64,000 nt of DNA from Ranitomeya imitator. Its lineage: Eukaryota. Below the pieces are notes generated by a model, which ran no database searches, had not been told where the DNA came from, and worked only from the letters and a program-made list of their open reading frames with translations. The position numbers and the translations under genes are program-made. How positions within the stretch are numbered: the first letter of the stretch is position 1; the number at the start of each line of letters is the position of its first letter. This document shows, piece after piece, positions 13,170 through 58,076 of this stretch. The stretch is taken from assembly GCF_032444005.1 (NCBI RefSeq), contig NC_091289.1, forward strand, positions 171,182,001 through 171,246,000, written 5' to 3'.

Positions 13170-15285
13170 AATAACTGATCTGCAGTTGTCACGAATTAAC
13201 AGGGTATACGGTGCTCTGCAATTTTAAGCGTATAGCTGGATGAACATCAAAACAAGTAAGTATGCGGCACTCACCCTTTTTTTTTTGCTGTGTATTCGTG
13301 CTCTTTATTGGATATAGCTTGTACAAGTTTATACATCCATATTAGGACATCAGGTTCACAGGAGGGTGCGGTAGTGGAGAGTGGACGACGGCCGTTTCGC
13401 ACGGAATGTGCTTCAACGGGTCCAGGTGATTGATTACCAAACGCCATTTCCCTTTAAAGGGATTTAGACGTGCATGCAAATACATACATGAAAAAAACAT
13501 TAAAAAACAAGTGAAAGTGACTTAATAACAAGTACAGGAAAGAAATATATCTTGGTAAAAGGTATCAACCACTGAGGACTCTCAATTCTAAATATTTTAA
13601 TAACAAGTAATCATCTCTAAAATGCAGACTTACAACCTTTAATATTAATACGGACCCTTTTTTATTGCGTTGAAAGCGTTTATAAAAATACTGACATATC
13701 TAATCTGTCGTTTAGGCCAATTGGACCTTGTGCATTGGAATTTAGAATCCATCTGGCTTCTTTTTGTAATAATAACCTATTTTGATCGCCTCCTTGCGGA
13801 GGATATTTTACAATTTCTAAGCCAGCGAATTTTAGCAAGTTTGGATTAGAATTATGTACCTCTTTCATATGTTGGATTAGCCTCAGACAGCCTTTGCCTG
13901 TTGTTATTGAGTTATAGTGTTCTTTAAATCTCGTTACCAGCGGTCTAATTGTTTTGCCAATATAGAAATATAAGCAGGGACAAAAAAGAACATAAACTAC
14001 AAATTTACTCTTACAGAAAATGAAATCCCCAACTTTATGTGTTATAGAGCCTAATTGGATGGGATTGTGTGTTATATGAAGGTGACAGAACCTGCAATTC
14101 CCGCACTTGTGATTTCCCTCTGGAATATTGCTTGTCAACCAGTTTTTTCTCGGTAATAAGATTTTATTGTGCACTAGCATATCTGACAAATTATGGGCTC
14201 GTTTATAAGCAAATTTGGGCATACTGGTGTGTATGTGTGCCAGATCTTTATCTGTCTGTAACACATGCCAGTTTTTCCGTATTGATGCGTGCACAATATT
14301 ATCCATATTACTATGCTTAAAGCAGAAAGCGAACCTCTCTTCATTAGTATTCTCCTCTTGGGGAGATTTTCTTTTTCTTTTTAGAACATCTGCTTGTGAA
14401 CACTTACTAATACGGTTTTCAGCTTCTTTTAAAACCTGCAGGGGATAGCCTTCATAAAGCGTGATTTTAACTCACCTATTTGTTCATTGAAAATTTGGTT
14501 ATTATTCTTGATTTTTCGTAATCTAACCATTTGGCTAAATGGGAGTCCTCTCTTAGTATGCATCGGGTGTGCACTATCAAAATGCAACAAGTTGTTAGTT
14601 ACCGTAGGTTTTTTGAAGACTTTAGTTGTTATCTCACCTTCTATAATTTCAATTTTCACATCTAAATATTCTAGACTGTCAGCTCCATAGCAAGATGAAA
14701 ATCGCATGTTATCTGTGTTACATAAATTCAGGTATTCTACAAAGTTATCGAATTCCGCCTTATTTCCGTCCCAGATTATAAAAATATCGTCCACAAATCT
14801 AATAAAAAGATGAATGTGTTTGAGAAAGGGGTTATTTATGTTGGTAATATATGTATCTTCGAAGACTGCTAAGAAAAGATTTGCATAAGTACATGCAGTG
14901 GGCGTACCCATTGCGGTCCCTACTAATTGTTTGTACCGTTTATCCATAAATTTAAAGGAGTTATGGGAGAGTATAAATTCTAACCCCTCTATAATAAAAG
15001 AAATTATCTCCAAATCGAGATTTCTGTCTTGTAGAATTTTTTGAATAGCTTGTATGCCTTTCTCTTGAGGAATACGGGTATACAGATTCACTACGTCGAT
15101 TGATGTTAGTGAGAACGTGCATTGCCAGTCTATCTTTTTTAAAGCTAACACCAGATCTCCAGAGTCTTTGATATACGATGGGATTGTTGGTAAAAGTGGT
15201 TTTAATAACCAATCTATATAATGGGACAGAGATTCTGTTACCAAATTGATCTCTATCTAACACAACAATATTTCCTCCTTTGTCT
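13170..15285 (-). mobile_element. Penelope-like element, left (inverted) copy: RT, GIY-YIG endonuclease and pseudo-LTR
   Basis: ORFs 14429-15244 (RT: GTAMGT, RFVDD) and 13680-14306 (CKSKFVVYVLFCPCLYFYIGKTIR...EH) are separated by a frameshift. Confidence 0.93.
13382..13424 (-). ncRNA. Minimal type I hammerhead ribozyme-like motif, CCGUUGA core variant, GUC triplet
   Basis: TGGAC-CCGTTGA-A-GCAC attcc GTGC-GAAA-CGGCCG-TC-GTCCA: stems I and II pair and stem III is palindromic. Confidence 0.7.
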
Positions 15286-15297
15286 TATAAGAAGGGC

Positions 15298-17460
15298 AGA
15301 CAAAGGAGGAAATATTGTTGTGTTAGATAGAGACTACTATATTAGAGAAGCCTTCACACAATTAAATGATCCTGTCACCTATTGTCCGCTACCAAACAAT
15401 CCCACCCAGAAATATAAAACAAAATTAAGAACACTAAGAAAATTTGTAGATAAAGGAGTATTATCTAAAAAACGAGCAGAAAGCTTATTGCCAGAATTTC
15501 CTCAATACCCTTACTGGTATAGCATACCAATGAATAGTGCGTAAGTGCATAAAAGAACCGCCAGGTCGTCCTATAATTTCCGGGATCAATTCGGTAACAG
15601 AATCTCTGTCCCATTATATAGATTGGTTATTAAAACCACTTTTACCAACAATCCCATCGTATATCAAAGACTCTGGAGATCTGGTGTTAGCTTTAAAAAA
15701 GATAGACTGGCAATGCACGTTCTCACTAACATCAATCGACGTAGTGAATCTGTATACCCGTATTCCTCAAGAGAAAGGCATACAAGCTATTCAAAAAATT
15801 CTACAAGACAGAAATCTCGATTTGGAGATAATTTCTTTTATTATAGAGGGGTTAGAATTTATACTCTCCCATAACTCCTTTAAATTTATGGATAAACGGT
15901 ACAAACAATTAGTAGGGACCGCAATGGGTACGCCCACTGCATGTACTTATGCAAATCTTTTCTTAGCAGTCTTCGAAGATACATATATTACCCACATAAA
16001 TAACCCCTTTCTCAAACACATTCGTCTTTTTATTAGATTTGTGGACGATATTTTTATAATCTGGGACGGAAATAAGGCGGAATTCGATAACTTTGTAGAA
16101 TACCTGAATTTATGTAACACAGATAACATGCGATTTTCATCTTGCTATGGAGCTGACAGTCTAGAATATTTAGATGTGAAAATTGAAATTATAGAAGGTG
16201 AGATAACAACTAAAGTCTTCAAAAAACCTACGGCAACTAACAACTTGTTGCATTTTGATAGTGCACACCCGATGCATACTAAGAGATGACTCCCATTTAG
16301 CCAAATGGTTAGATTACGAAAAATCAACAATAATAACCAAATTTTCAATGAACAAATAGGTGAGTTAAAATCACGCTTTATGAATAGAGGCTATCCCCTG
16401 CAGGTTTTAAAAGAAGCTGAAAACCGTATTAGTAATTGTTCACAAGCAGATGTTCTAAAAAGAAAAAGAAAATCTCCCCAAGAGGAGAATACTAATGAAG
16501 AGAGGTTCGCTTTCTGCTTTAAGCATAGTAATATGGATAATATTGTGCACGCATCAATACGGAAAAACTGGCATGTGTTACAGACAGATAAAGATCTGGC
16601 ACACATACACACCAGTATGCCCAAATTTGCTTATAAACGAGCCCATAATTTGTCAGATATGCTAGTGCACAATAAAATCTTATTACCGAGAAAAAACTGG
16701 TTGACAAGCAATATTCCAGAGGGAAATCACAAGTGCTGGAATTGCAGGTTCTGTCACCTTCATATAACACACAATCCCATCCAATTAGGCTCTATAACAC
16801 ATAAAGTTCGGGATTTCATTTTCTGTAAGAGTAAATTTGTAGTTTATGTTCTTTTTTGTCCCTGCTTATATTTCTATATTGGCAAAACAATTAGACCGCT
16901 GGTAACGAGATTCAAAGAACACTATAACTCAATAACAACAGGCAAAGGCTGTCTGAGGCTAATCCAACATATGAAAGAGGTACATAATTCTAATCCAAAC
17001 TTGCTAAAATTCGCTGGCTTAGAAATTGTAAAATATTCCCCGCAAAAAGGCGATCAAAACAGGTTATTATTACAAAAAGAAGCCAGATGGATTCTAAATT
17101 CCAATGCACAAGGTCCAATTGGCCTAAACGACAGATTAGATATGTCAGTATTTTTATAAACGCTTTCAACGCAATAAAAAAGGGTCCGTATTAATATTAA
17201 AGGTTGTAAGTCTGCATTTTAGAGATGATTACTTGTTATTAAGTCACTTTCACTTGTTTTTTAATGTTTTTTTCATGTATGTATTTGCATGCACGTCTAA
17301 AACCCTTTAAAGGGAAATGATGTTTGGTAATCACCTGGACCCGTTGAAGCACATTCCGTGCGAAACGGCCGTTGTCCACTCTCCACTACCGCACCCTCCT
17401 GTGAACCTGATGTCCTAATATGGATGTATAAACTTGTACAAGCTATATCCAATAAAGAGC
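15298..17460 (+). mobile_element. Penelope-like element, right copy, 5'-truncated
   Basis: RADKGGNIVV...PPGRPIISG, RT 15537-16289, a premature TGA at 16287 where the other copy has GGA, GIY-YIG 16305-17159, and a terminal repeat ending in aataaagagc. Confidence 0.93.
17336..17378 (+). ncRNA. Minimal type I hammerhead ribozyme-like motif, CCGUUGA core variant, GUU triplet
   Basis: Same fold as 13382-13424 with C17 changed to U. Confidence 0.68.
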
Positions 17461-51591: not shown

Positions 51592-51928
51592 NNNNNNNNN
51601 NNNNNNNNNNNNNNNNNNNNNNNNNNNNNNNNNNNNNNNNNNNNNNNNNNNNNNNNNNNNNNNNNNNNNNNNNNNNNNNNNNNNNNNNNNNNNNNNNNNN
51701 NNNNNNNNNNNNNNNNNNNNNNNNNNNNNNNNNNNNACTTACACACATATACATAAGTGCNNNNNNNNNNNNNNNNNNNNNNNNNNNNNNNNNNNNNNNN
51801 NNNNNNNNNNNNNNNNNNNNNNNNNNNNNNNNNNNNNNNNNNNNNNNNNNNNNNNNNNNNNNNNNNNNNNNNNNNNNNNNNNNNNNNNNNNNNNNNNNNN
51901 NNNNNNNNNNNNNNNNNNNNNNNNNNNN
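51592..51928. other. Masked or assembly gaps (two N runs)
   Basis: N at 51592-51736 and 51761-51928. Confidence 0.98.
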
Positions 51929-52282
51929 CAGACATACATATACACACACACACATATACACATTCATACACAACACACAATTTGAAATTCACCATAAAGG
52001 AATTGACCTGCATAATGAATGATGTAAAAAACAAAACCCTAAAAACAATGACAGAAGAAGGTTACCTCCCTTCTCCATATTTGTCTACATATAAGGCGAA
52101 GAATTGTGGCGCCTTTAATTTTTATTTAAAGAAAATGTAAATAAATTTGTAACTAGGCACTGTATAACATTTATTTATTGCACAAAATAATGAGTTTGTG
52201 TCACGTTACAAAAATATTTAGAATTGAGGGTCCTCAGTGGTTGATACCTTTTAATGGCTAACTGAAAAGATGGTAACAAATT

Positions 52283-52319
52283 GCAAGCTTTCGAGACTAC
52301 ACAGGTCTCTTCATCAGGC
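52283..52319 (-). ncRNA. Minimal hammerhead ribozyme motif with canonical CUGAUGA/GAAA core, sense to IFT25
   Basis: GC-CTGATGA-A-GAGAC ctgtgta GTCTC-GAAA-GC-TT-GC; palindromic AGCU stem III; predicted cleavage between 52285 and 52284. Confidence 0.72.
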
Positions 52320-52477
52320 GAAGACTAAAAGAAATTCTGAAGAATCACATATTTATGCACAACATAGCACAGAAAAAAAAAGTGAAAAACCATGGATAAG
52401 CCATGGTTTTCCCCCTTTTTTTTTCTGTGCTATGTTGTGCATAAATATGTGATTCTTCAGAATTTCTTTTAGTCTTC

Positions 52478-52513
52478 GCCTGATGAAGAGACCTGTGTAG
52501 TCTCGAAAGCTGC
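52478..52513 (+). ncRNA. Second hammerhead copy lacking one U at the cleavage site (probably inactive)
   Basis: GAAAGCTGC instead of GAAAGCTTGC. Confidence 0.6.
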
Positions 52514-52766
52514 AATTTGTTACCATCTTCTCAGTTAGCCATTAAAAGGTATCAACCACTGAGGACTCTCAATTCTAAATATTTTTCTATCTACTGGCTA
52601 ACACGGTACCAAGATATATTTCTTTCCTGTCCCGTTACAAGAAGATCTATTCCAGAGGATTTCCATCTTCCCTTAATTACAGAAAACTTTGACAGGTCCT
52701 TGCAGGGTCGGCTTCACGTGACCTGGGTCAGTCCTTTCCACCGATTGTCTCACATGGTGCCGTCAT

Positions 52767-52865
52767 TCATATTGTGCTCTCAGCCGATACACTGCGAATG
52801 GAGACAAAATGATCGTATCCAGAGAGGATCACAAAACGCAAATGAATGGCCTGAACCCCAGGAAG
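52767..52865 (-). CDS. IFT25: IFT25/HSPB11 last coding exon
   Basis: LPGVQAIHLRFVILSGYDHFVSIRSVSAESTI*; CAG acceptor; TGA at 52767-52769. Confidence 0.93.
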   Translation of the reverse strand, partial: LPGVQAIHLRFVILSGYDHFVSIRSVSAESTI

Positions 52866-53558: not shown

Positions 53559-53602
53559 AGTGATCTCCTCTGTTTGGAACTGGCCTTCCACATGCTCAAG
53601 TT
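53559..53602 (-). CDS. IFT25: IFT25 coding exon 4
   Basis: (E)LEHVEGQFQTEEIT; 44 nt; AG/GTAAGT boundaries. Confidence 0.92.
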
Positions 53603-53940
53603 CTTGAAAGAAGAAAAGTCACATTACATATTTATAGTAATCATGAATATGCCAGATATCCGTTTGCGGAATAATTTTTGTGTTGATATAACGTAATCCA
53701 GCCAAGAGGTGGTAAAAGTAAAAATGTGTAAAATATCCAGCAAATTACACAAAATGTATCACACATTTCCTCTCGGGCAGTCTGCACATTATACGGACTG
53801 CACTCGTATCTACTGACAGTATGTCATTCCTTATATCCCCTATGGTGCCATTGCTGCGCGAGGGAATTTTTCTCAGTAGTACAACATTCTGTGATCACCT
53901 AAATTTTAAGCCACCCTTCCGGAGAAGACAACTCTTTTAA

Positions 53941-54285
53941 AGGGAACCGGTCACCAGCAAAAACGCTATTAATCTGCAGACATGGGGTTAATCTGCAGGT
54001 TAATAGCGTTACTAACCTGTCTGGCGCCTGCACATAGCCGAAGGCTGCATGGAGAAAATGGTAACTGACAGCCAACCCCAGTGAAGAGCCAGTGTCGGTC
54101 AGGTCCGCGGGTACGATTACATCTGCTGCTCCCTATACTCAGAGCGGTGACTGAACCCGAATGCTGCTGGAGGGAATAAAGTTAAATTTCTCCCTCCGGT
54201 GTTCGGCTACATGCAGGTGCCAGACAGGTTAGTAATCCCATATCTGCAGAGTGATAGCATTTTTTTTGCTGGTGACAGGTTCCCT
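53941..54285. mobile_element. Kolobok/T2-like MITE in an IFT25 intron
   Basis: TTAA duplication; ends agggaaccggtcaccagc / gctggtgacaggttccct. Confidence 0.85.
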
Positions 54286-54313
54286 TTAACAAAATAAACA
54301 TGGCTGCTCTTAC

Positions 54314-54382
54314 CTCTTTCCATGCATGGCTCAAAGTTTGTTGCTTCTTTGGATGCACTTGTGTAGATTTTTAAGCTTCGTA
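54314..54382 (-). CDS. IFT25: IFT25 coding exon 3
   Basis: (V)RSLKIYTSASKEATNFEPCMER; 69 nt; phases fit. Confidence 0.9.
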
Positions 54383-54498
54383 CTAGAAAAGAACAAGAAG
54401 AAAATAGAATAATATATTAAAGGGAACCTGTCAGGCAATTCAACCACAGGCAGCCTCAATCAGAGAGCAGCTCCAAAATGACAAATATCCATGTTTTA

Positions 54499-54724
54499 GG
54501 CCGGTTTCACATGTCAGTGGCTCCGGTACATGAGGTGACAGTTTCCTCACGTACCGGAGCCACTGACACACGTAGACGCATTAAAATCAATGCATCTGTG
54601 CAGATGTCATTGATTTTTTGCGGACCGTGTCTCCGTGTGCCACACTGATGTGCCAAAGAAACGCACCAGCACACGGACACAGATAATTCCGGTACCGGAA
54701 TTATCTGGACGTGTGAGACCGGCC
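54499..54724. mobile_element. Harbinger-like MITE
   Basis: Ends ggccggtttcacatgtc / gacgtgtgagaccggcc with TTA flanks. Confidence 0.7.
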
Positions 54725-55597
54725 TTACTCTGAGATACAATTTTTTTTTATTATTCTGGCTGCTCGCACATGTGCATCACTAACCCTATAGACCAATAGG
54801 AGAAAACAGGGTGGCAATCACATCGGTTCTTGTGAGGGGTCCCGGCTGTCAGACCACCAATCAATATATATTAATTCCATATGCTTTGGATAAGGGATAA
54901 ATGTGAGACATGAGACAACCCCTTTAAAGGGATATTTTCACAATCATAAAAGGGGTTGTCTGATGATTTCTGGCAGGAGCATGCTATTCCTCAACCTCCC
55001 GACTTCCTGCTTGATTGACAGATCAGACTGTGGCATTGTCACACCTCTAACCCGAACTACACTGTCCAATCAGGCATGTTTGCCTCTGCGTAAATCGGAA
55101 GAGCGCAGTTGTACTGATGCTGGCCGGATTGGGAGTTAACAGTGTGCTCCAGCGATCCCGGCCAGCTTCAAACGCAGCTGATAGAAAAGAGCTTGTAAAC
55201 AGCGCACATGTTCGTTCACCACTGCAAGTCTGCAGCAGTGGCAGGTAACCTAGGCAAAATAATAAATAAAATAAAAAATTACTTAAAGTAACAATTAATT
55301 GGTAAATTATTTAAAGTAAATGGAAATGAGAATTGCAAATACAATGATTTAGTCCAAACTAGCAGATATTCTGATGCGATGTGTTTCTTGTCACCTGATT
55401 TCTAGCAGTTACGCGCTCCCACAGTTCTCGTGACTAGCATTCGCAGTGAAATCCGTTCTGTTCCTACAGCATGCACAAGTCTGCGGGTATAACTGCACAG
55501 TGAGAGCAGCTGCAGTGTAAAGCACTCCTTTTGTTCCTGGAGGAAGCAGTTGGTTGCGCTTGCGCCGTCACAATCTATACGGCTCGGGCTTACCTAC

Positions 55598-55704
55598 CTA
55601 ATGAACTCTCAAGAGTAATTTTTCCGACCTTCTGTAAGCCGTTCATGCTGATAATGAATTCTTGGGGAAACATTCCTGTCGTTGTCCATAAAGTCTCTGG
55701 ATTT
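55598..55704 (-). CDS. IFT25: IFT25 coding exon 2
   Basis: (G)NPETLWTTTGMFPQEFII... matches human NPETFWTTTGMFPQEFII. Confidence 0.95.
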
Positions 55705-56180: not shown

Positions 56181-56281
56181 CCGTCAATCATGCGCTCGGC
56201 CGGGTGTCTCTCATCGCTGGAGGTGGCCAGAGACACTCGAGCTCCCGCCGAGCTCAGACACAGGTTACCCGCCCGGGTCAT
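56181..56281 (-). CDS. IFT25: IFT25 coding exon 1
   Basis: MTRAGNLCLSSAGARVSLATSSDERHPAERMID(G); GTGAG donor at 56176-56180. Confidence 0.93.
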
Positions 56282-56760
56282 GTCACCAGATAGCAGGGAA
56301 CTCCGGTTCGCCTCTTGTTGATATGCCGTTACTAGGAAACAGAAAGGTTTTCCGGAAATGATCACATAACCCGGAAGTGCACGGGTAATTTATCCTCTTT
56401 AAGCACCGAGAAGAAACGTTCCGAATGAGAAAGGTTCCGGAGCGCTGTGCACCCGGGGACAGAGGTGAATTACCTTGTAGTAAGGAGAGGGGGGGCACAC
56501 CGTCCTTGCGAGGGTTAAAACTATAATATTCAGTGGTGGGAAATGGGGTTTAATGTAATTTTACTGCTTTTGAAAAACTTTACAAAAAGTGCTGTACTAG
56601 TCACCACTGCCATTACTTACCGGCATTTAAAGGGTAAAACAGGTTTCAGATTTTTAGAAAATGCATAAAAAGGTGATTTTAAAGTTTCCTGAGGTGAGTC
56701 GGCGCGGTGTCCTAGCAACAAGCCTGTCGCAAATAGGGCTGAATTGGCGCTAAGCTAATG
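56282..56760. promoter_or_regulatory. Probable bidirectional promoter for IFT25 and LRRC42; candidate LRRC42 non-coding exon donor gtgagt at 56694-56699
   Basis: CpG-rich; CCGGAAGT at about 56371 and other ETS-like cores; head-to-head gene arrangement. Confidence 0.6.
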
Positions 56761-58076
56761 GAAAATGGGGGTAAAGAAGCTTATTGGCGCTGACTGGGCT
56801 TATTTCCTAGATTTTACTGCCATATTAATCAGATTTAAGTGCTGGTTATGGGGGTCCGACCACTGGAACCGCAAGCGATCCTGAGATCAGGCCTCTTTGA
56901 TGGAGTGACGATGCACATGCTCGAGCTCTGTCCTGTTTGTCTAGGGGGCTCCCAGAGGAAGTACAGCGCTCGGTTATTTCCGGCAGTGCTATAGACAATT
57001 AATGGTGTGGAGACTGAGCATGTGGACGGATCAAAAGTGCCCTGTCCTGACATTAGTGGGGGTCCCAGGTACTAACTGCTATATGGAGAAAACCCCAAAA
57101 GATCGGACATCAGGAGATTGGCCAGTTTTTCTACTTCCATTAGGATCCCAGTTCTGTCCTGCAGCAATGACGTCCCCAGCTACTCACATGAATGTGAAAC
57201 ACTACCTTATGTTTAAAAGGAATTTGTCAGCAGGTTTTTGCTATGTAATCCGAGAGTAGCATGATGTAGGGGAAGAGAATCTGATTGCAAGGATGTGTCG
57301 CTTATTTGATTATATGCTGTAGTTTCACCATAATCAGTGTTTTATCAGCAGGAAATTATCACTGCTGTACTTGATCTCACATGCACAGCAGTCCAGCTAA
57401 TCTGTGGAACCCCGCCCCACCACTGATTGGCAGCTTTCTGCCTATGCGCAGTGTACACAGGAGGCTGTCAATCAGGGGTGTGGGCAAGGTTATACACAGC
57501 TCAGCATTCAGAGACTTGCTAAATCTACGGCAGAGAAAACATCTATCAAAACTGTACCAAGCAGTCCAGAAAGCGATACATCGCTGTAATCAGGGTCTCT
57601 GCCCCTATATTATGCTGCAGTGGGAGGAGAAAGCAGCTGGGTCAGGAGTTGAAGAGGGGGATGATGAATACAGGAACAAGAGACTTCCTGTTTCTACATA
57701 GAGTAGAGAACAGAGGAGAATTAGTGGGGTAGAAAGGCAAAAATGAGCAATTGTAAGTACACAGTGCTGTATAATATCATGACTGCAATATATTAAGAGG
57801 ATAAAAAACTTTGCTGGGAGGACGAGGGCTTCTTTAAATCAATGTTTGTGCAGGGGATTTGGAGCTCTGTATTAGAAAAGAAAAGTTGAATCTGTAATAT
57901 AGATATATTAGGAAATAATTCAGAACAGAATTTTAAAGCGATTTTTATAGAATAAGTGTGTACCATCACAATTTAGAAACCCACCATCTGTCGTCACTAT
58001 ATACAGGGGAAAGCTGAGTGTTTTGGGGTGTCAAATGAATGTCATATATTATCCCTTTTCTCCTTTTGATATTCAG

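What the first reader, a model, noticed from the sequence alone, without database searches (positions are those of the whole stretch)
52170..52769. Sense-strand hammerhead ribozyme caged in a self-antisense hairpin in the predicted IFT25 3' UTR
Seen: after the IFT25 stop (52767) I find no AATAAA or ATTAAA on the minus strand until 52255-52250 (the element's own ATTAAA) and 52179-52170, so the mRNA should include the whole fold-back. The polymerase would first copy the arm antisense to the damaged hammerhead (52586-52401), then a 5-nt loop, then the intact CUGAUGA/GAAA hammerhead (52319-52283), whose cut site lies about 30 nt before the first poly(A) signal. Inference: the ~185-bp stem would hold the ribozyme inactive, while unwinding, ADAR editing or dimerisation through the AGCU palindrome could release it and remove the poly(A) tail. 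This would be a transposon-built stability switch on a ciliary transport gene; the stem alone could also drive editing, Staufen binding or siRNA production. Caveats: stem I is only 2 bp, minimal hammerheads cleave poorly as monomers, and the transcript end is not known.
Basis: partly seen in the sequence, partly recalled or inferred. Interest (0 to 1): 0.8.

Follow-up and report, generated by a model that had tools for sequence, protein, structure and literature searches.

The report
Penelope-type inverted insert in IFT25 UTR
The hairpin after the frog IFT25 gene is one ordinary Penelope-type retroelement insertion made of two inverted end-fragments, each with a minimal hammerhead motif; it does seem to sit in the mRNA, but nothing suggests that the ribozyme cuts or acts as a switch.

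Summary
There is a near-perfect fold-back (arms 52211-52395 and 52401-52585, 5-nt loop). Each arm has a CUGAUGA...GAAA hammerhead core, and the sense copy lies on the IFT25 mRNA strand. No canonical poly(A) signal lies between the stop codon and the element.

The fold-back is a single 420-bp Penelope-like-element (PLE) insertion, 52211-52630. It has a 10-bp target duplication (9/10 identical), two inverted 5'-truncated 185-nt terminal copies, and a 45-nt "tail" at one end only. This is the published PLE insertion signature. A 65-bp micro-insertion with the same two termini and a perfect 10-bp duplication lies at 13534-13598.

The motif shows the published hallmarks of metazoan PLE "min-hammerheads". 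Rfam's hammerhead models do not detect it.

Spliced RNA contigs reach the element from the IFT25 exons. Another RNA contig leaves the element and ends at 52107, 14 nt past an AATAAA. The mRNA therefore probably carries the hairpin.

The switch idea is unsupported:
- Helix I is 2 bp here, against 4 bp in the family majority.
- Single min-hammerheads are reported to be inactive in vitro.
- Freeing the motif costs about +67 kcal/mol.

Generic dsRNA effects are the only plausible function. Earlier follow-ups in this scan described similar inverted hammerhead insertions elsewhere in this genome.

The parts
52767..52865 (-). Last coding exon of IFT25/HSPB11, with stop TGA at 52769-52767
   Evidence: Translation matches the C-terminus of human HSPB11 (PDB 1tvg, E 7.7e-6). 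The spliced RNA contigs give a joint at 52865|53559. The 5-exon CDS has GT-AG introns.
52107..52766 (-). Inferred IFT25 3' UTR (about 660 nt) that contains the insertion
   Evidence: The IFT25 contig runs to 52601 in X1, X2 and X6. A separate contig covers 52107-52240 in the same three RNA runs (depth 62/7/16 against 94/41/22). The introns are uncovered. Continuity across the repeat is not shown.
52631..52640 (-). Target-site duplication, upstream copy (TTGTAACGGG)
   Evidence: 9/10 identical to the downstream copy
52211..52630 (.). One PLE-type insertion (420 bp): inverted tail, antisense arm, loop and sense arm, read along the mRNA
   Evidence: The TSDs bound it. The k=31 contigs stop at 52601 and 52240, which is exactly 30 nt inside the termini at 52630 and 52211. 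The same two termini bound the insert at 13534-13598. If the shared T at 52211 is counted in the TSD, the element ends at 52212.
52586..52630 (+). 45-nt 'tail' extension, present at this end only
   Evidence: The right arm continues 45 nt past the point where the left arm and the 13.5-kb copy end. The family depth at 52592 is still in the thousands to tens of thousands in all four runs, so the tail is part of the family. It matches the PLE tail described in PMC8557442 and PMC11167929.
52401..52585 (+). Right arm: 5'-truncated terminal copy, sense on the plus strand, so antisense in the mRNA
52480..52511 (+). Hammerhead core of the plus-strand copy, which lacks the cleavage-site U (G at position 17)
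52396..52400 (.). 5-nt loop (ATAAG) between palindromic CCATGG arm ends
52211..52395 (-). Left arm: 5'-truncated terminal copy, sense on the mRNA strand, ending without a tail
52281..52321 (-). Min-hammerhead motif. Helix I 5' strand 52321-52318; CUGAUGA 52317-52311; extra A 52310; helix II 52309-52305 / 52297-52293; GAA 52292-52290; AGCU 52289-52286; U17 52285; helix I 3' strand 52284-52281. Predicted cut at 52285/52284.
   Evidence: The hallmarks are those listed in PMC4209133. Rfam gave no hit.
52202..52211 (-). Target-site duplication, downstream copy (TTGTAACGTG). Its first T may belong to the element instead.
52114..52126 (-). AATAAA (52126-52121) and ATTAAA (52119-52114), just upstream of the RNA contig end at 52107. 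This is the likely poly(A) signal and site.
52170..52179 (-). RNA contigs run through it.
13534..13598 (+). 65-bp micro-insertion of the same family. It joins 24 nt of inverted tail end to the last 41-43 nt of the tail-less end, flanked by a perfect 10-bp TSD (AATAACAAGT, 13524-13533 and 13599-13608).
   Evidence: It is absent from the mirror arm of the 4.2-kb Penelope fold-back.

Best explanation
The fold-back is the footprint of one integration event of a Penelope-like retroelement, or of a non-autonomous derivative that uses the PLE machinery.

How it formed. A staggered cut of the target gave the 9-10-bp duplication. cDNA synthesis was primed from both DNA strands. One synthesis started at the inner reverse-transcription start site, which gives the end ...AAATATTTT. 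The other started 45 nt further out, which gives the 'tail' ending ...TTTCCTGT. Both copies were 5'-truncated at the same point, 185 nt from the tail-less end, and were joined head to head. Each arm carries the family's minimal hammerhead, 74 nt upstream of the tail-less end.

What it does now. The insertion landed about 135 nt past the IFT25 stop codon, upstream of the poly(A) site near 52107. The mRNA most likely carries a ~185-bp near-perfect RNA duplex. The hammerhead is a decayed passenger: it has no helix III, a 2-bp helix I, and is locked inside the duplex. It most likely never cleaves. Any effect on IFT25 would come from the duplex itself (ADAR editing, nuclear retention, Staufen or Dicer access), as with inverted SINE pairs in mammalian 3' UTRs.

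Shown: the anatomy, the duplications, the tail, the family termini and the RNA on both sides of the element.
Inferred: the two-strand priming mechanism, continuity of the mRNA through the hairpin, and inactivity of the ribozyme.
For: - TSD TTGTAACGGG / TTGTAACGTG sits exactly at the ends of a 420-bp unit.
- The arms are 185 nt with only 6 differences. Both share the derived C at helix I position 2.3 (52320 and 52477), where 82-100% of family contig depth has U. Both arms therefore came from one template.
- The 45-nt tail is at one end only. PMC8557442 describes this pattern: an inverted 5'-truncated copy adjacent, and a 30-40-bp tail often at only one end.
- PMC11167929 reports that a PLE protein cleaves and extends both strands, and starts reverse transcription at two internal sites that delimit the tail. 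These lie about 85-92 nt downstream of the hammerhead cut (from the positions given in PMC11167929), against 74 nt here.
- A second insert at 13534-13598 has the same two termini and a perfect 10-bp TSD.
- Contig depth rises from the arm interior to the terminus (about 14,500 at 52331 to about 143,000 at 52259 in X15). This is a 5'-truncation gradient.
- The contig breaks at 52601 and 52240 equal the termini minus or plus 30 nt for k = 31.
- A canonical PLE with RT then GIY-YIG hits and the same hammerhead architecture lies at 13300-17460.
- The motif shows four of the min-hammerhead hallmarks: an extra nucleotide after A9, the G10.1-C11.1 pair, palindromic 15.2/16.2, and a short helix I (against PMC4209133).
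- Dual min-hammerheads on opposite strands 100-700 bp apart are reported (PMC4209133).
- The hammerhead-competent fold costs +66.6 kcal/mol. The isolated arm does not adopt it either.
Against: - No genome-wide set of family copies could be aligned, so the consensus, the covariation in the helices and the link to a particular autonomous PLE are indirect.
- The arms have no RT ORF nearby.
- The identical truncation point of both arms is not explained by simple two-strand priming. It needs a template switch or self-priming at the palindromic CCATGG.
- Only assembled contigs were available, not raw reads. Continuity of the mRNA through the hairpin, editing, and ends at the cut site could not be examined.
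- Inactivity of the ribozyme is argued from published work on other min-hammerheads, not measured on this one.
Confidence: 0.8

Rival explanations
1. The sense hammerhead is a caged but releasable ribozyme. Unwinding, ADAR editing or AGCU-mediated dimerisation frees it, it cuts at 52285/52284, removes the poly(A) tail and tunes IFT25 mRNA stability.
For: - All invariant core nucleotides and U16.1-U17 are intact in the sense copy.
- The mRNA appears to include the element.
- The cut site lies upstream of all the usable poly(A) signals.
- An active PLE's hammerhead can be protein-assisted (PMC11167929), so a trans factor could in principle help.
Against: - Helix I is 2 bp, there is no helix III, and no Rfam hammerhead model matches even at E <= 10 on 84 nt.
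- Single min-hammerheads gave no detectable cleavage, and dimers gave low activity at non-physiological Mg2+ (PMC4209133).
- No in vivo ends were seen at a PLE hammerhead site (PMC11167929).
- The penalty to free the motif is +66.6 kcal/mol.
- The downstream UTR piece is present at 18-73% of the upstream depth in RNA runs, so any cleavage is at most partial.
- The architecture is fully explained by the integration mechanism.
- Editing would also hit essential core adenosines (inference).
Confidence: 0.04
2. The hairpin matters as double-stranded RNA, independently of the ribozyme. The ~185-bp duplex in the IFT25 3' UTR is hyper-edited by ADAR and/or causes nuclear retention, Staufen binding or siRNA production, and so measurably lowers or gates IFT25 output. 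This is compatible with the best explanation and concerns consequence only.
For: - The duplex is long and nearly perfect, and it is probably in the mature transcript.
- A>G changes on the hammerhead-sense strand at 52249, 52259 and 52274 make up 0.8-31% of family contig depth in the RNA runs. In X15, which looks like DNA because its contigs cover the intron unspliced, they make up 0.1-0.5%. Other variant types are mostly within about two-fold of X15 in X1 and X2, with two of them three- to four-fold higher in X2.
- Inverted Alu pairs in human 3' UTRs behave this way (PMC11263572, PMC4378195).
Against: - The A>G signal comes from contigs of thousands of paralogous copies, not from the IFT25 copy.
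- The library type of X15 is not on record.
- In X6 all variant classes are elevated.
- No small-RNA, localisation or expression data were available.
- IFT25 contig depth is unremarkable.
Confidence: 0.3
3. The hairpin is not part of the mature IFT25 mRNA. The transcript ends or is processed at the edge of the element, and the RNA at 52107-52240 belongs to another transcript.
For: - No contig bridges 52240-52601.
- Contigs carry no strand information.
- In X2 the downstream depth is only 18% of the upstream depth.
Against: - There is no AATAAA or ATTAAA between the stop codon and the element.
- The contig breaks at 52601 and 52240 are what a k = 31 assembler produces at a high-copy repeat.
- The downstream contig ends at the same base (52107) in three runs, 14 nt after a minus-strand AATAAA.
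- Nothing beyond 52107 is covered, and the introns are not covered either.
Confidence: 0.1

Closest known systems
Minimal hammerheads (min-HHRs) of metazoan Penelope-like elements (Cervera & De la Pena 2014, PMC4209133)
   Same: CUGAUGA and GAAA boxes; an unpaired nucleotide between A9 and G10.1; the G10.1-C11.1 pair; palindromic 15.2/16.2 with no loop 3; a short helix I; thousands of copies in an amphibian genome; pairs on opposite strands 100-700 bp apart.
   Different: Helix II is 5 bp, against the 7-8 bp typical of the Schistosoma families. Helix I in this copy has decayed to 2 bp. The partner copy has lost the cleavage-site nucleotide. No covariation set is available here.
PLE insertion architecture: inverted 5'-truncated copy plus one-sided 30-40-bp tail (Craig et al. 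2021, PMC8557442; Frangieh et al. 2024, PMC11167929)
   Same: 5' truncation, an adjacent inverted copy, a tail at one end only, a target duplication, and a hammerhead about 75-90 nt upstream of the reverse-transcription start site.
   Different: Both copies are very short (185 nt) and there is no full-length copy or ORF. The tail is 45 nt. The two arms are truncated at the same nucleotide, giving a hairpin with a 5-nt loop.
Non-LTR retrozymes of amphibians and their monomers in last exons / 3' UTRs (Li, Clavereau & Pollet 2026, bioRxiv 10.64898/2026.07.22.740005)
   Same: A non-coding hammerhead-bearing repeat related to PLE terminal regions. The few copies that overlap exons lie mostly in 3' UTRs.
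   Different: There is no tandem array here. Retrozyme status (circular RNA, tandem units) was not tested.
Inverted Alu/SINE pairs in mammalian 3' UTRs (PMC11263572, PMC4378195)
   Same: Two inverted retroelement copies form a long intramolecular duplex in a 3' UTR. The expected consequences are the same.
   Different: A different element class and a different host. The arms come from one insertion event, not two. The loop is 5 nt. Editing and retention are not shown here.
Discontinuous hammerhead in rodent Clec2 3' UTRs (Martick et al. 2008; reviewed in PMC2950038 and PMC6155905)
   Same: A hammerhead core within a 3' UTR upstream of the poly(A) site.
   Different: From my own recollection of Martick et al. 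2008, not checked here: the Clec2 ribozyme has complete helices I-III with tertiary contacts and cleaves efficiently. This motif lacks helix III and has a 2-bp helix I.

Membership tests
PLE min-hammerhead (PMC4209133) | Catalytic boxes CUGAUGA and GAAA flanking helix II | tested here: met
   Both arms have them. Only these two hits occur in 64 kb, against 0.005 expected.
PLE min-hammerhead (PMC4209133) | [quoted passage not shown] | tested here: met
   A at 52310
PLE min-hammerhead (PMC4209133) | G10.1-C11.1 pair closing helix II | tested here: met
   G 52309 pairs with C 52293. The stem GAGAC/GUCUC is 5 bp.
PLE min-hammerhead (PMC4209133) | Palindromic 15.2/16.2, with minimal or absent loop 3 | tested here: met
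   A15.1-G-C-U16.1 (AGCU) at 52289-52286
PLE min-hammerhead (PMC4209133) | U16.1 followed by H17 (not G) at the cleavage site | tested here: met
   The minus copy has U-U at 52286-52285. The plus copy does not meet this (G after AGCU).
PLE min-hammerhead (PMC4209133) | Helix I of about 4-5 bp | tested here: not met
   This copy has 2 bp (GC/GC). The family majority has U at 2.3 (52320 G>A in 82-100% of contig depth), which gives 4 bp GCAA/UUGC.
PLE min-hammerhead (PMC4209133) | Families with covariation and compensatory changes | not testable with these tools
   No search of this frog genome is possible. Only two arms and contig summaries were available.
PLE min-hammerhead (PMC4209133) | Self-cleavage | not testable with these tools
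   Only assembled contigs were available, so no read ends could be seen. No bench test was possible.
Rfam hammerhead families (types I, II, III, HH9, HH10) | Score against the curated covariance models | tested here: not met
   No hammerhead match at the gathering threshold on the whole window, nor at E <= 10 on 601 nt or 84 nt.
PLE-type insertion (PMC8557442, PMC11167929) | Target-site duplication bounding the unit | tested here: met
   10 bp with 9/10 identical here, and a perfect 10 bp at the second insert.
PLE-type insertion (PMC8557442, PMC11167929) | An inverted 5'-truncated copy adjacent to a direct copy | tested here: met
   Two 185-nt terminal copies lie head to head. The contig depth shows a 5'-truncation gradient.
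PLE-type insertion (PMC8557442, PMC11167929) | An optional 30-40-bp tail at one end only, from two alternative RT start sites | tested here: met
   The 45-nt tail at 52586-52630 is at one end only. The same tail terminus and tail-less terminus occur at 13534-13598. The tail is slightly longer than the quoted range.
PLE-type insertion (PMC8557442, PMC11167929) | RT plus GIY-YIG ORF of the same family | tested here: inconclusive
   There is no ORF in this insert. A PLE with weak RVT_1 and GIY-YIG hits lies at 13300-17460, but it belongs to another sequence family.
Regulatory 3' UTR hammerhead (Clec2 type) | A complete three-helix hammerhead able to form in the mRNA | tested here: not met
   There is no helix III and helix I is 2 bp. 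The competent fold is +66.6 kcal/mol above the MFE.
Inverted-repeat dsRNA element in a 3' UTR (IRAlu-like) | Both arms present in the mature mRNA | tested here: inconclusive
   RNA contigs abut both ends of the element at similar depth, but none bridges it. All 14 sampled words of the stretch 52590-52770 (unique UTR plus tail) are held by several RNA-type runs.
Inverted-repeat dsRNA element in a 3' UTR (IRAlu-like) | Clustered A-to-I editing in the arms | tested here: inconclusive
   There is RNA-enriched A>G at 52249, 52259 and 52274 at the family level only, and the nature of the control run is uncertain.

The most novel reading that the evidence does not exclude
The IFT25 mRNA carries, in sense orientation, a functional PLE recognition module: the hammerhead plus the inner reverse-transcription start site. 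When PLE protein is expressed, it binds the UTR, opens the duplex and assists hammerhead cleavage (a protein-assisted ribozyme, as reported for the anole element). This would cut off the poly(A) tail or use the IFT25 mRNA as a template for retrocopying. IFT25 output would then be coupled to transposon activity.
Probability: 0.03. Interest if true: 0.7.

Novelty: new member of a known kind. Interest (0 to 1): 0.25.

Why it matters
For the gene: the IFT25 mRNA of this frog probably carries a ~185-bp perfect RNA duplex. That makes it a reasonable candidate for ADAR editing or nuclear retention in a non-mammalian vertebrate. It is one of many such cases to be expected in a genome full of these elements.

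For transposon biology: this locus, together with the 65-bp micro-insertion at 13.5 kb, gives clean in vivo footprints of what was recently shown in vitro for a Penelope-like element. Those are priming from both target strands, and two alternative internal reverse-transcription start sites that delimit the 'tail'.

For the ribozyme question, the result is negative. The motif is a decayed passenger, and the 'cage' is an integration by-product.

Tried and rejected
- Rfam scans at three scales. They returned only spurious long-hairpin matches (plant miRNA precursors, snoRNAs) well below the gathering scores, and no hammerhead.
- Alternative hammerhead registers. I tried (a) a type-III-like layout using the inner fold-back as helix I, which fails because positions 16.1/17 would be A and G, and (b) a helix III hairpin with loop UUGCAAUUU and a cut after GUUA, which fails because no helix I follows. 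Both were read directly from the sequence.
- MITE or DNA-transposon reading of the palindrome. I rejected it because the termini are asymmetric (tail at one end), the contig depth shows a 5'-truncation gradient, and the 65-bp copy has the same two different ends.
- Splicing as the origin of the junction in the 65-bp copy. I rejected it because the junction is not at the CAG acceptor-like site and shows only TA microhomology.
- Supplementary tables of the 2026 retrozyme preprint, to look for hspb11/ift25 among 3' UTR cases. Only an oligo-order sheet is held, so nothing usable came of it.
- Earlier scan notes searched by sequence and by combined words came back blank.
- Second run search, on the stretch 52590-52770 (unique UTR plus tail). 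Only organism A holds it, so there is no information on whether related species share the insertion.
- Editing calls. Only Logan contigs were available, the single read-laying run is spent, and family paralogues cannot be separated from the IFT25 copy.
Full report
**1. What is in the sequence**

The region 52207-52589 is a near-perfect inverted repeat. Two contiguous blocks are 96-97% complementary, around a 5-nt loop. As RNA, 52170-52620(-) folds into one ~185-bp stem at -324.6 kcal/mol, against -94 +/- 5 for shuffles (z = -44.7).

The same 32-nt string, from CUGAUGA to GAAAGCU, occurs once on each strand: 52317-52286 on the minus strand and 52480-52511 on the plus strand. A descriptor was run over the window: CUGAUGA, 0-1 extra nucleotide, a stem of at least 4 bp closed by G-C, then GAAA. 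It hits only these two places in the 64-kb window. Shuffled windows give 0.005 hits.

An arm-to-arm alignment shows only six differences. One of them is a missing T in the plus copy, which puts G at the cleavage position.

There are two more, at 52126-52121 and 52119-52114.

**2. The gene**

The last exon translates to a peptide that matches the C-terminus of human HSPB11/IFT25 (PDB 1tvg, E = 7.7e-6; Chlamydomonas IFT25 matches weakly).

Spliced contigs in three RNA-type runs define five exons with GT-AG introns: 56181-56327, 55598-55704, 54314-54382, 53559-53602 and 52601-52865. The open frame begins MTRAGNLCLSS and ends at TGA 52769-52767.

**3. The element is bigger than the fold-back and is one insertion**

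A BLAST of the region against the window found that the outer 43 nt of the arm recur at 13556-13598. It also found that 24 nt lying just outside the fold-back (52630-52607, minus strand) recur at 13534-13557.

At 13.5 kb these two pieces form a 65-bp insert flanked by a perfect 10-bp duplication, AATAACAAGT. The insert is present in the left arm of a 4.2-kb Penelope fold-back and absent from its mirror arm.

At the IFT25 locus the same two termini bound a 420-bp unit, 52211-52630. It is flanked by TTGTAACGGG and TTGTAACGTG.

Read along the mRNA, the unit has this order:
- the inverted 45-nt extension;
- the antisense arm;
- the loop ATAAG;
- the sense arm, which ends ...AAATATTTT.

Read arm by arm, each arm is the last 185 nt of the same element, pointing outward. 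One of them continues 45 nt further.

**4. Independent support from sequencing runs (Logan contigs only)**

- The repeat has word depths of 10^3-10^5, against 22-94 for the unique IFT25 mRNA contigs and 56 for the unique sequence in X15. It is therefore a family of thousands of copies.
- Depth climbs from the arm interior (about 14,500 at 52331 in X15) to the terminus (about 143,000 at 52259). That is what 5' truncation produces.
- The tail still has a depth of about 34,000 at 52592 in X15 and of thousands in all four runs. The tail is therefore a family feature carried by a minority of copies.
- The unique contigs stop at 52601 and 52240. With k = 31, that is exactly 30 nt inside termini at 52630 and 52211.
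- Nearly all family contigs read U where both arms here have C (52320 and its mirror 52477). The two arms therefore share a derived change and come from one template.

**5. What kind of element**

The features match the published description of Penelope-like element (PLE) insertions. These are frequent 5' truncation, an inverted 5'-truncated copy adjacent, and a 30-40-bp tail often at only one end (PMC8557442).

The anole PLE protein cleaves and extends both target strands. It starts reverse transcription at two internal RNA sites whose spacing is the tail. From the positions given in that paper, these sites lie about 85-92 nt downstream of the hammerhead cut site (PMC11167929). Here the cut site is 74 nt from the tail-less terminus and 119 nt from the tail terminus.

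A PLE with RT and C-terminal GIY-YIG hits, both below Pfam's cut-offs, lies at 13300-17460. It has the same hammerhead layout: a 4-bp helix I, an extra A, a 4-bp helix II and a palindromic helix III. Its core has two substitutions.

Earlier notes of this scan identify the genome as a poison frog. They list many hammerhead retrozyme or PLE insertions with inverted arms and target duplications. I did not re-test those.

**6. The hammerhead**

The motif shows the hallmarks that Cervera & De la Pena give for metazoan PLE min-hammerheads (PMC4209133):
- a nucleotide between A9 and G10.1 (A 52310);
- the G10.1-C11.1 pair;
- palindromic 15.2/16.2 with no loop 3 (AGCU);
- a short helix I.

The same paper reports about 9,000 such motifs in Xenopus tropicalis, and pairs on opposite strands 100-700 bp apart. 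Rfam's hammerhead models do not see the motif at any threshold tried. This fits a motif that lacks helix III.

In this copy helix I is 2 bp. In the family majority it is 4 bp.

**7. Is it in the mRNA?**

There is no canonical signal between the stop codon and the element.

The IFT25 contig enters the element in X1, X2 and X6. A second contig leaves it and ends at the same base, 52107, in all three runs. That base is 14 nt after AATAAA 52126-52121. The depths are 62/7/16 against 94/41/22 upstream. Introns and the sequence beyond 52107 are not covered.

Several RNA-type runs of organism A hold all 14 sampled words of 52590-52770, a stretch that includes the tail. No contig bridges the repeat, so continuity is inferred. 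No joint that removes the hairpin is among the listed joints for the RNA-type runs; 73 further joints were not shown.

**8. Does the ribozyme work?**

Forcing the hammerhead-competent local fold within the 660-nt UTR costs +66.6 kcal/mol. The sense arm alone does not adopt it, and two copies do not dimerise through AGCU in co-folding.

Published tests found no cleavage by single min-hammerheads and low activity by dimers (PMC4209133). An active PLE's hammerhead needed the element's protein and left no detectable ends in RNA-seq (PMC11167929).

The mRNA has one sense copy only. I therefore rate the switch at about 4%.

**9. What the hairpin itself might do**

A long perfect duplex in a 3' UTR is the substrate class known from inverted Alu pairs (PMC11263572, PMC4378195).

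At the family level, A>G changes on the hammerhead-sense strand (52249, 52259, 52274) make up 0.8-31% of depth in the RNA runs. In X15, whose contigs cover the intron unspliced, they make up 0.1-0.5%. In X1 the other variant types are within about two-fold of X15. In X2 most are too, but 52321 and 52592 are three- to four-fold higher.

This hints at editing of family transcripts. It is not evidence for the IFT25 copy, because X15's library type is unknown and X6 shows elevation of all variant classes.

**10. Verdict**

The origin as a transposon insertion and the inclusion in the mRNA are supported. The regulatory ribozyme switch is not.

This is a new instance of a known kind. Its modest value is as a clean natural footprint of two-strand priming and dual start sites in PLE integration.

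Noticed in passing
window 13524-13608: A 65-bp micro-insertion of the same family lies in one arm only of the 4.2-kb Penelope fold-back. It joins 24 nt of inverted tail end to 41-43 nt of the tail-less end, with TA microhomology, and is flanked by a perfect 10-bp TSD (AATAACAAGT). It is therefore younger than that fold-back. It shows that even tiny inserts carry both kinds of terminus.
   Followed up: yes
window 13300-17460: The large Penelope fold-back has weak RVT_1 (E 4e-5) and GIY-YIG (E 2e-3) hits on the minus strand of its left arm. Its hammerhead has the same architecture (4-bp helix I, extra A, palindromic GGCC loop) but a doubly substituted core (CCGUUGA). The cut site lies about 88 nt from the outer end.
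   Followed up: partly
window 52249, 52259, 52274 (also 52306): At the family level, A>G changes on the hammerhead-sense strand are 6-19 times more frequent in RNA runs X1 and X2 than in the DNA-like run X15. Most other variant types are near 1x. This may reflect ADAR editing of transcripts of this repeat family.
   Followed up: partly
window 52601 and 52240: The unique RNA and DNA contigs stop exactly 30 nt inside the repeat termini. With k = 31 assemblies this gives a base-exact, independent read-out of where a high-copy family ends.
   Followed up: yes
window 52181: All three RNA runs read T where the window has C, at 100% of the contig depth. This is probably an allele private to the assembled individual. 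X1 also differs at 52196, 52655 and 52715.
   Followed up: no
window 53929-54728 and 57129-57900: Other high-copy repeats in IFT25 introns have contig depths of 10^2-10^4 in all runs, and many internal joints in 57239-57589. They were not identified.
   Followed up: no
window 51592-51736 and 51761-51928: Two N runs lie about 180 nt downstream of the inferred IFT25 poly(A) site, next to a CA/TA-rich microsatellite-like stretch at 51929-51972. They were left untouched.
   Followed up: no
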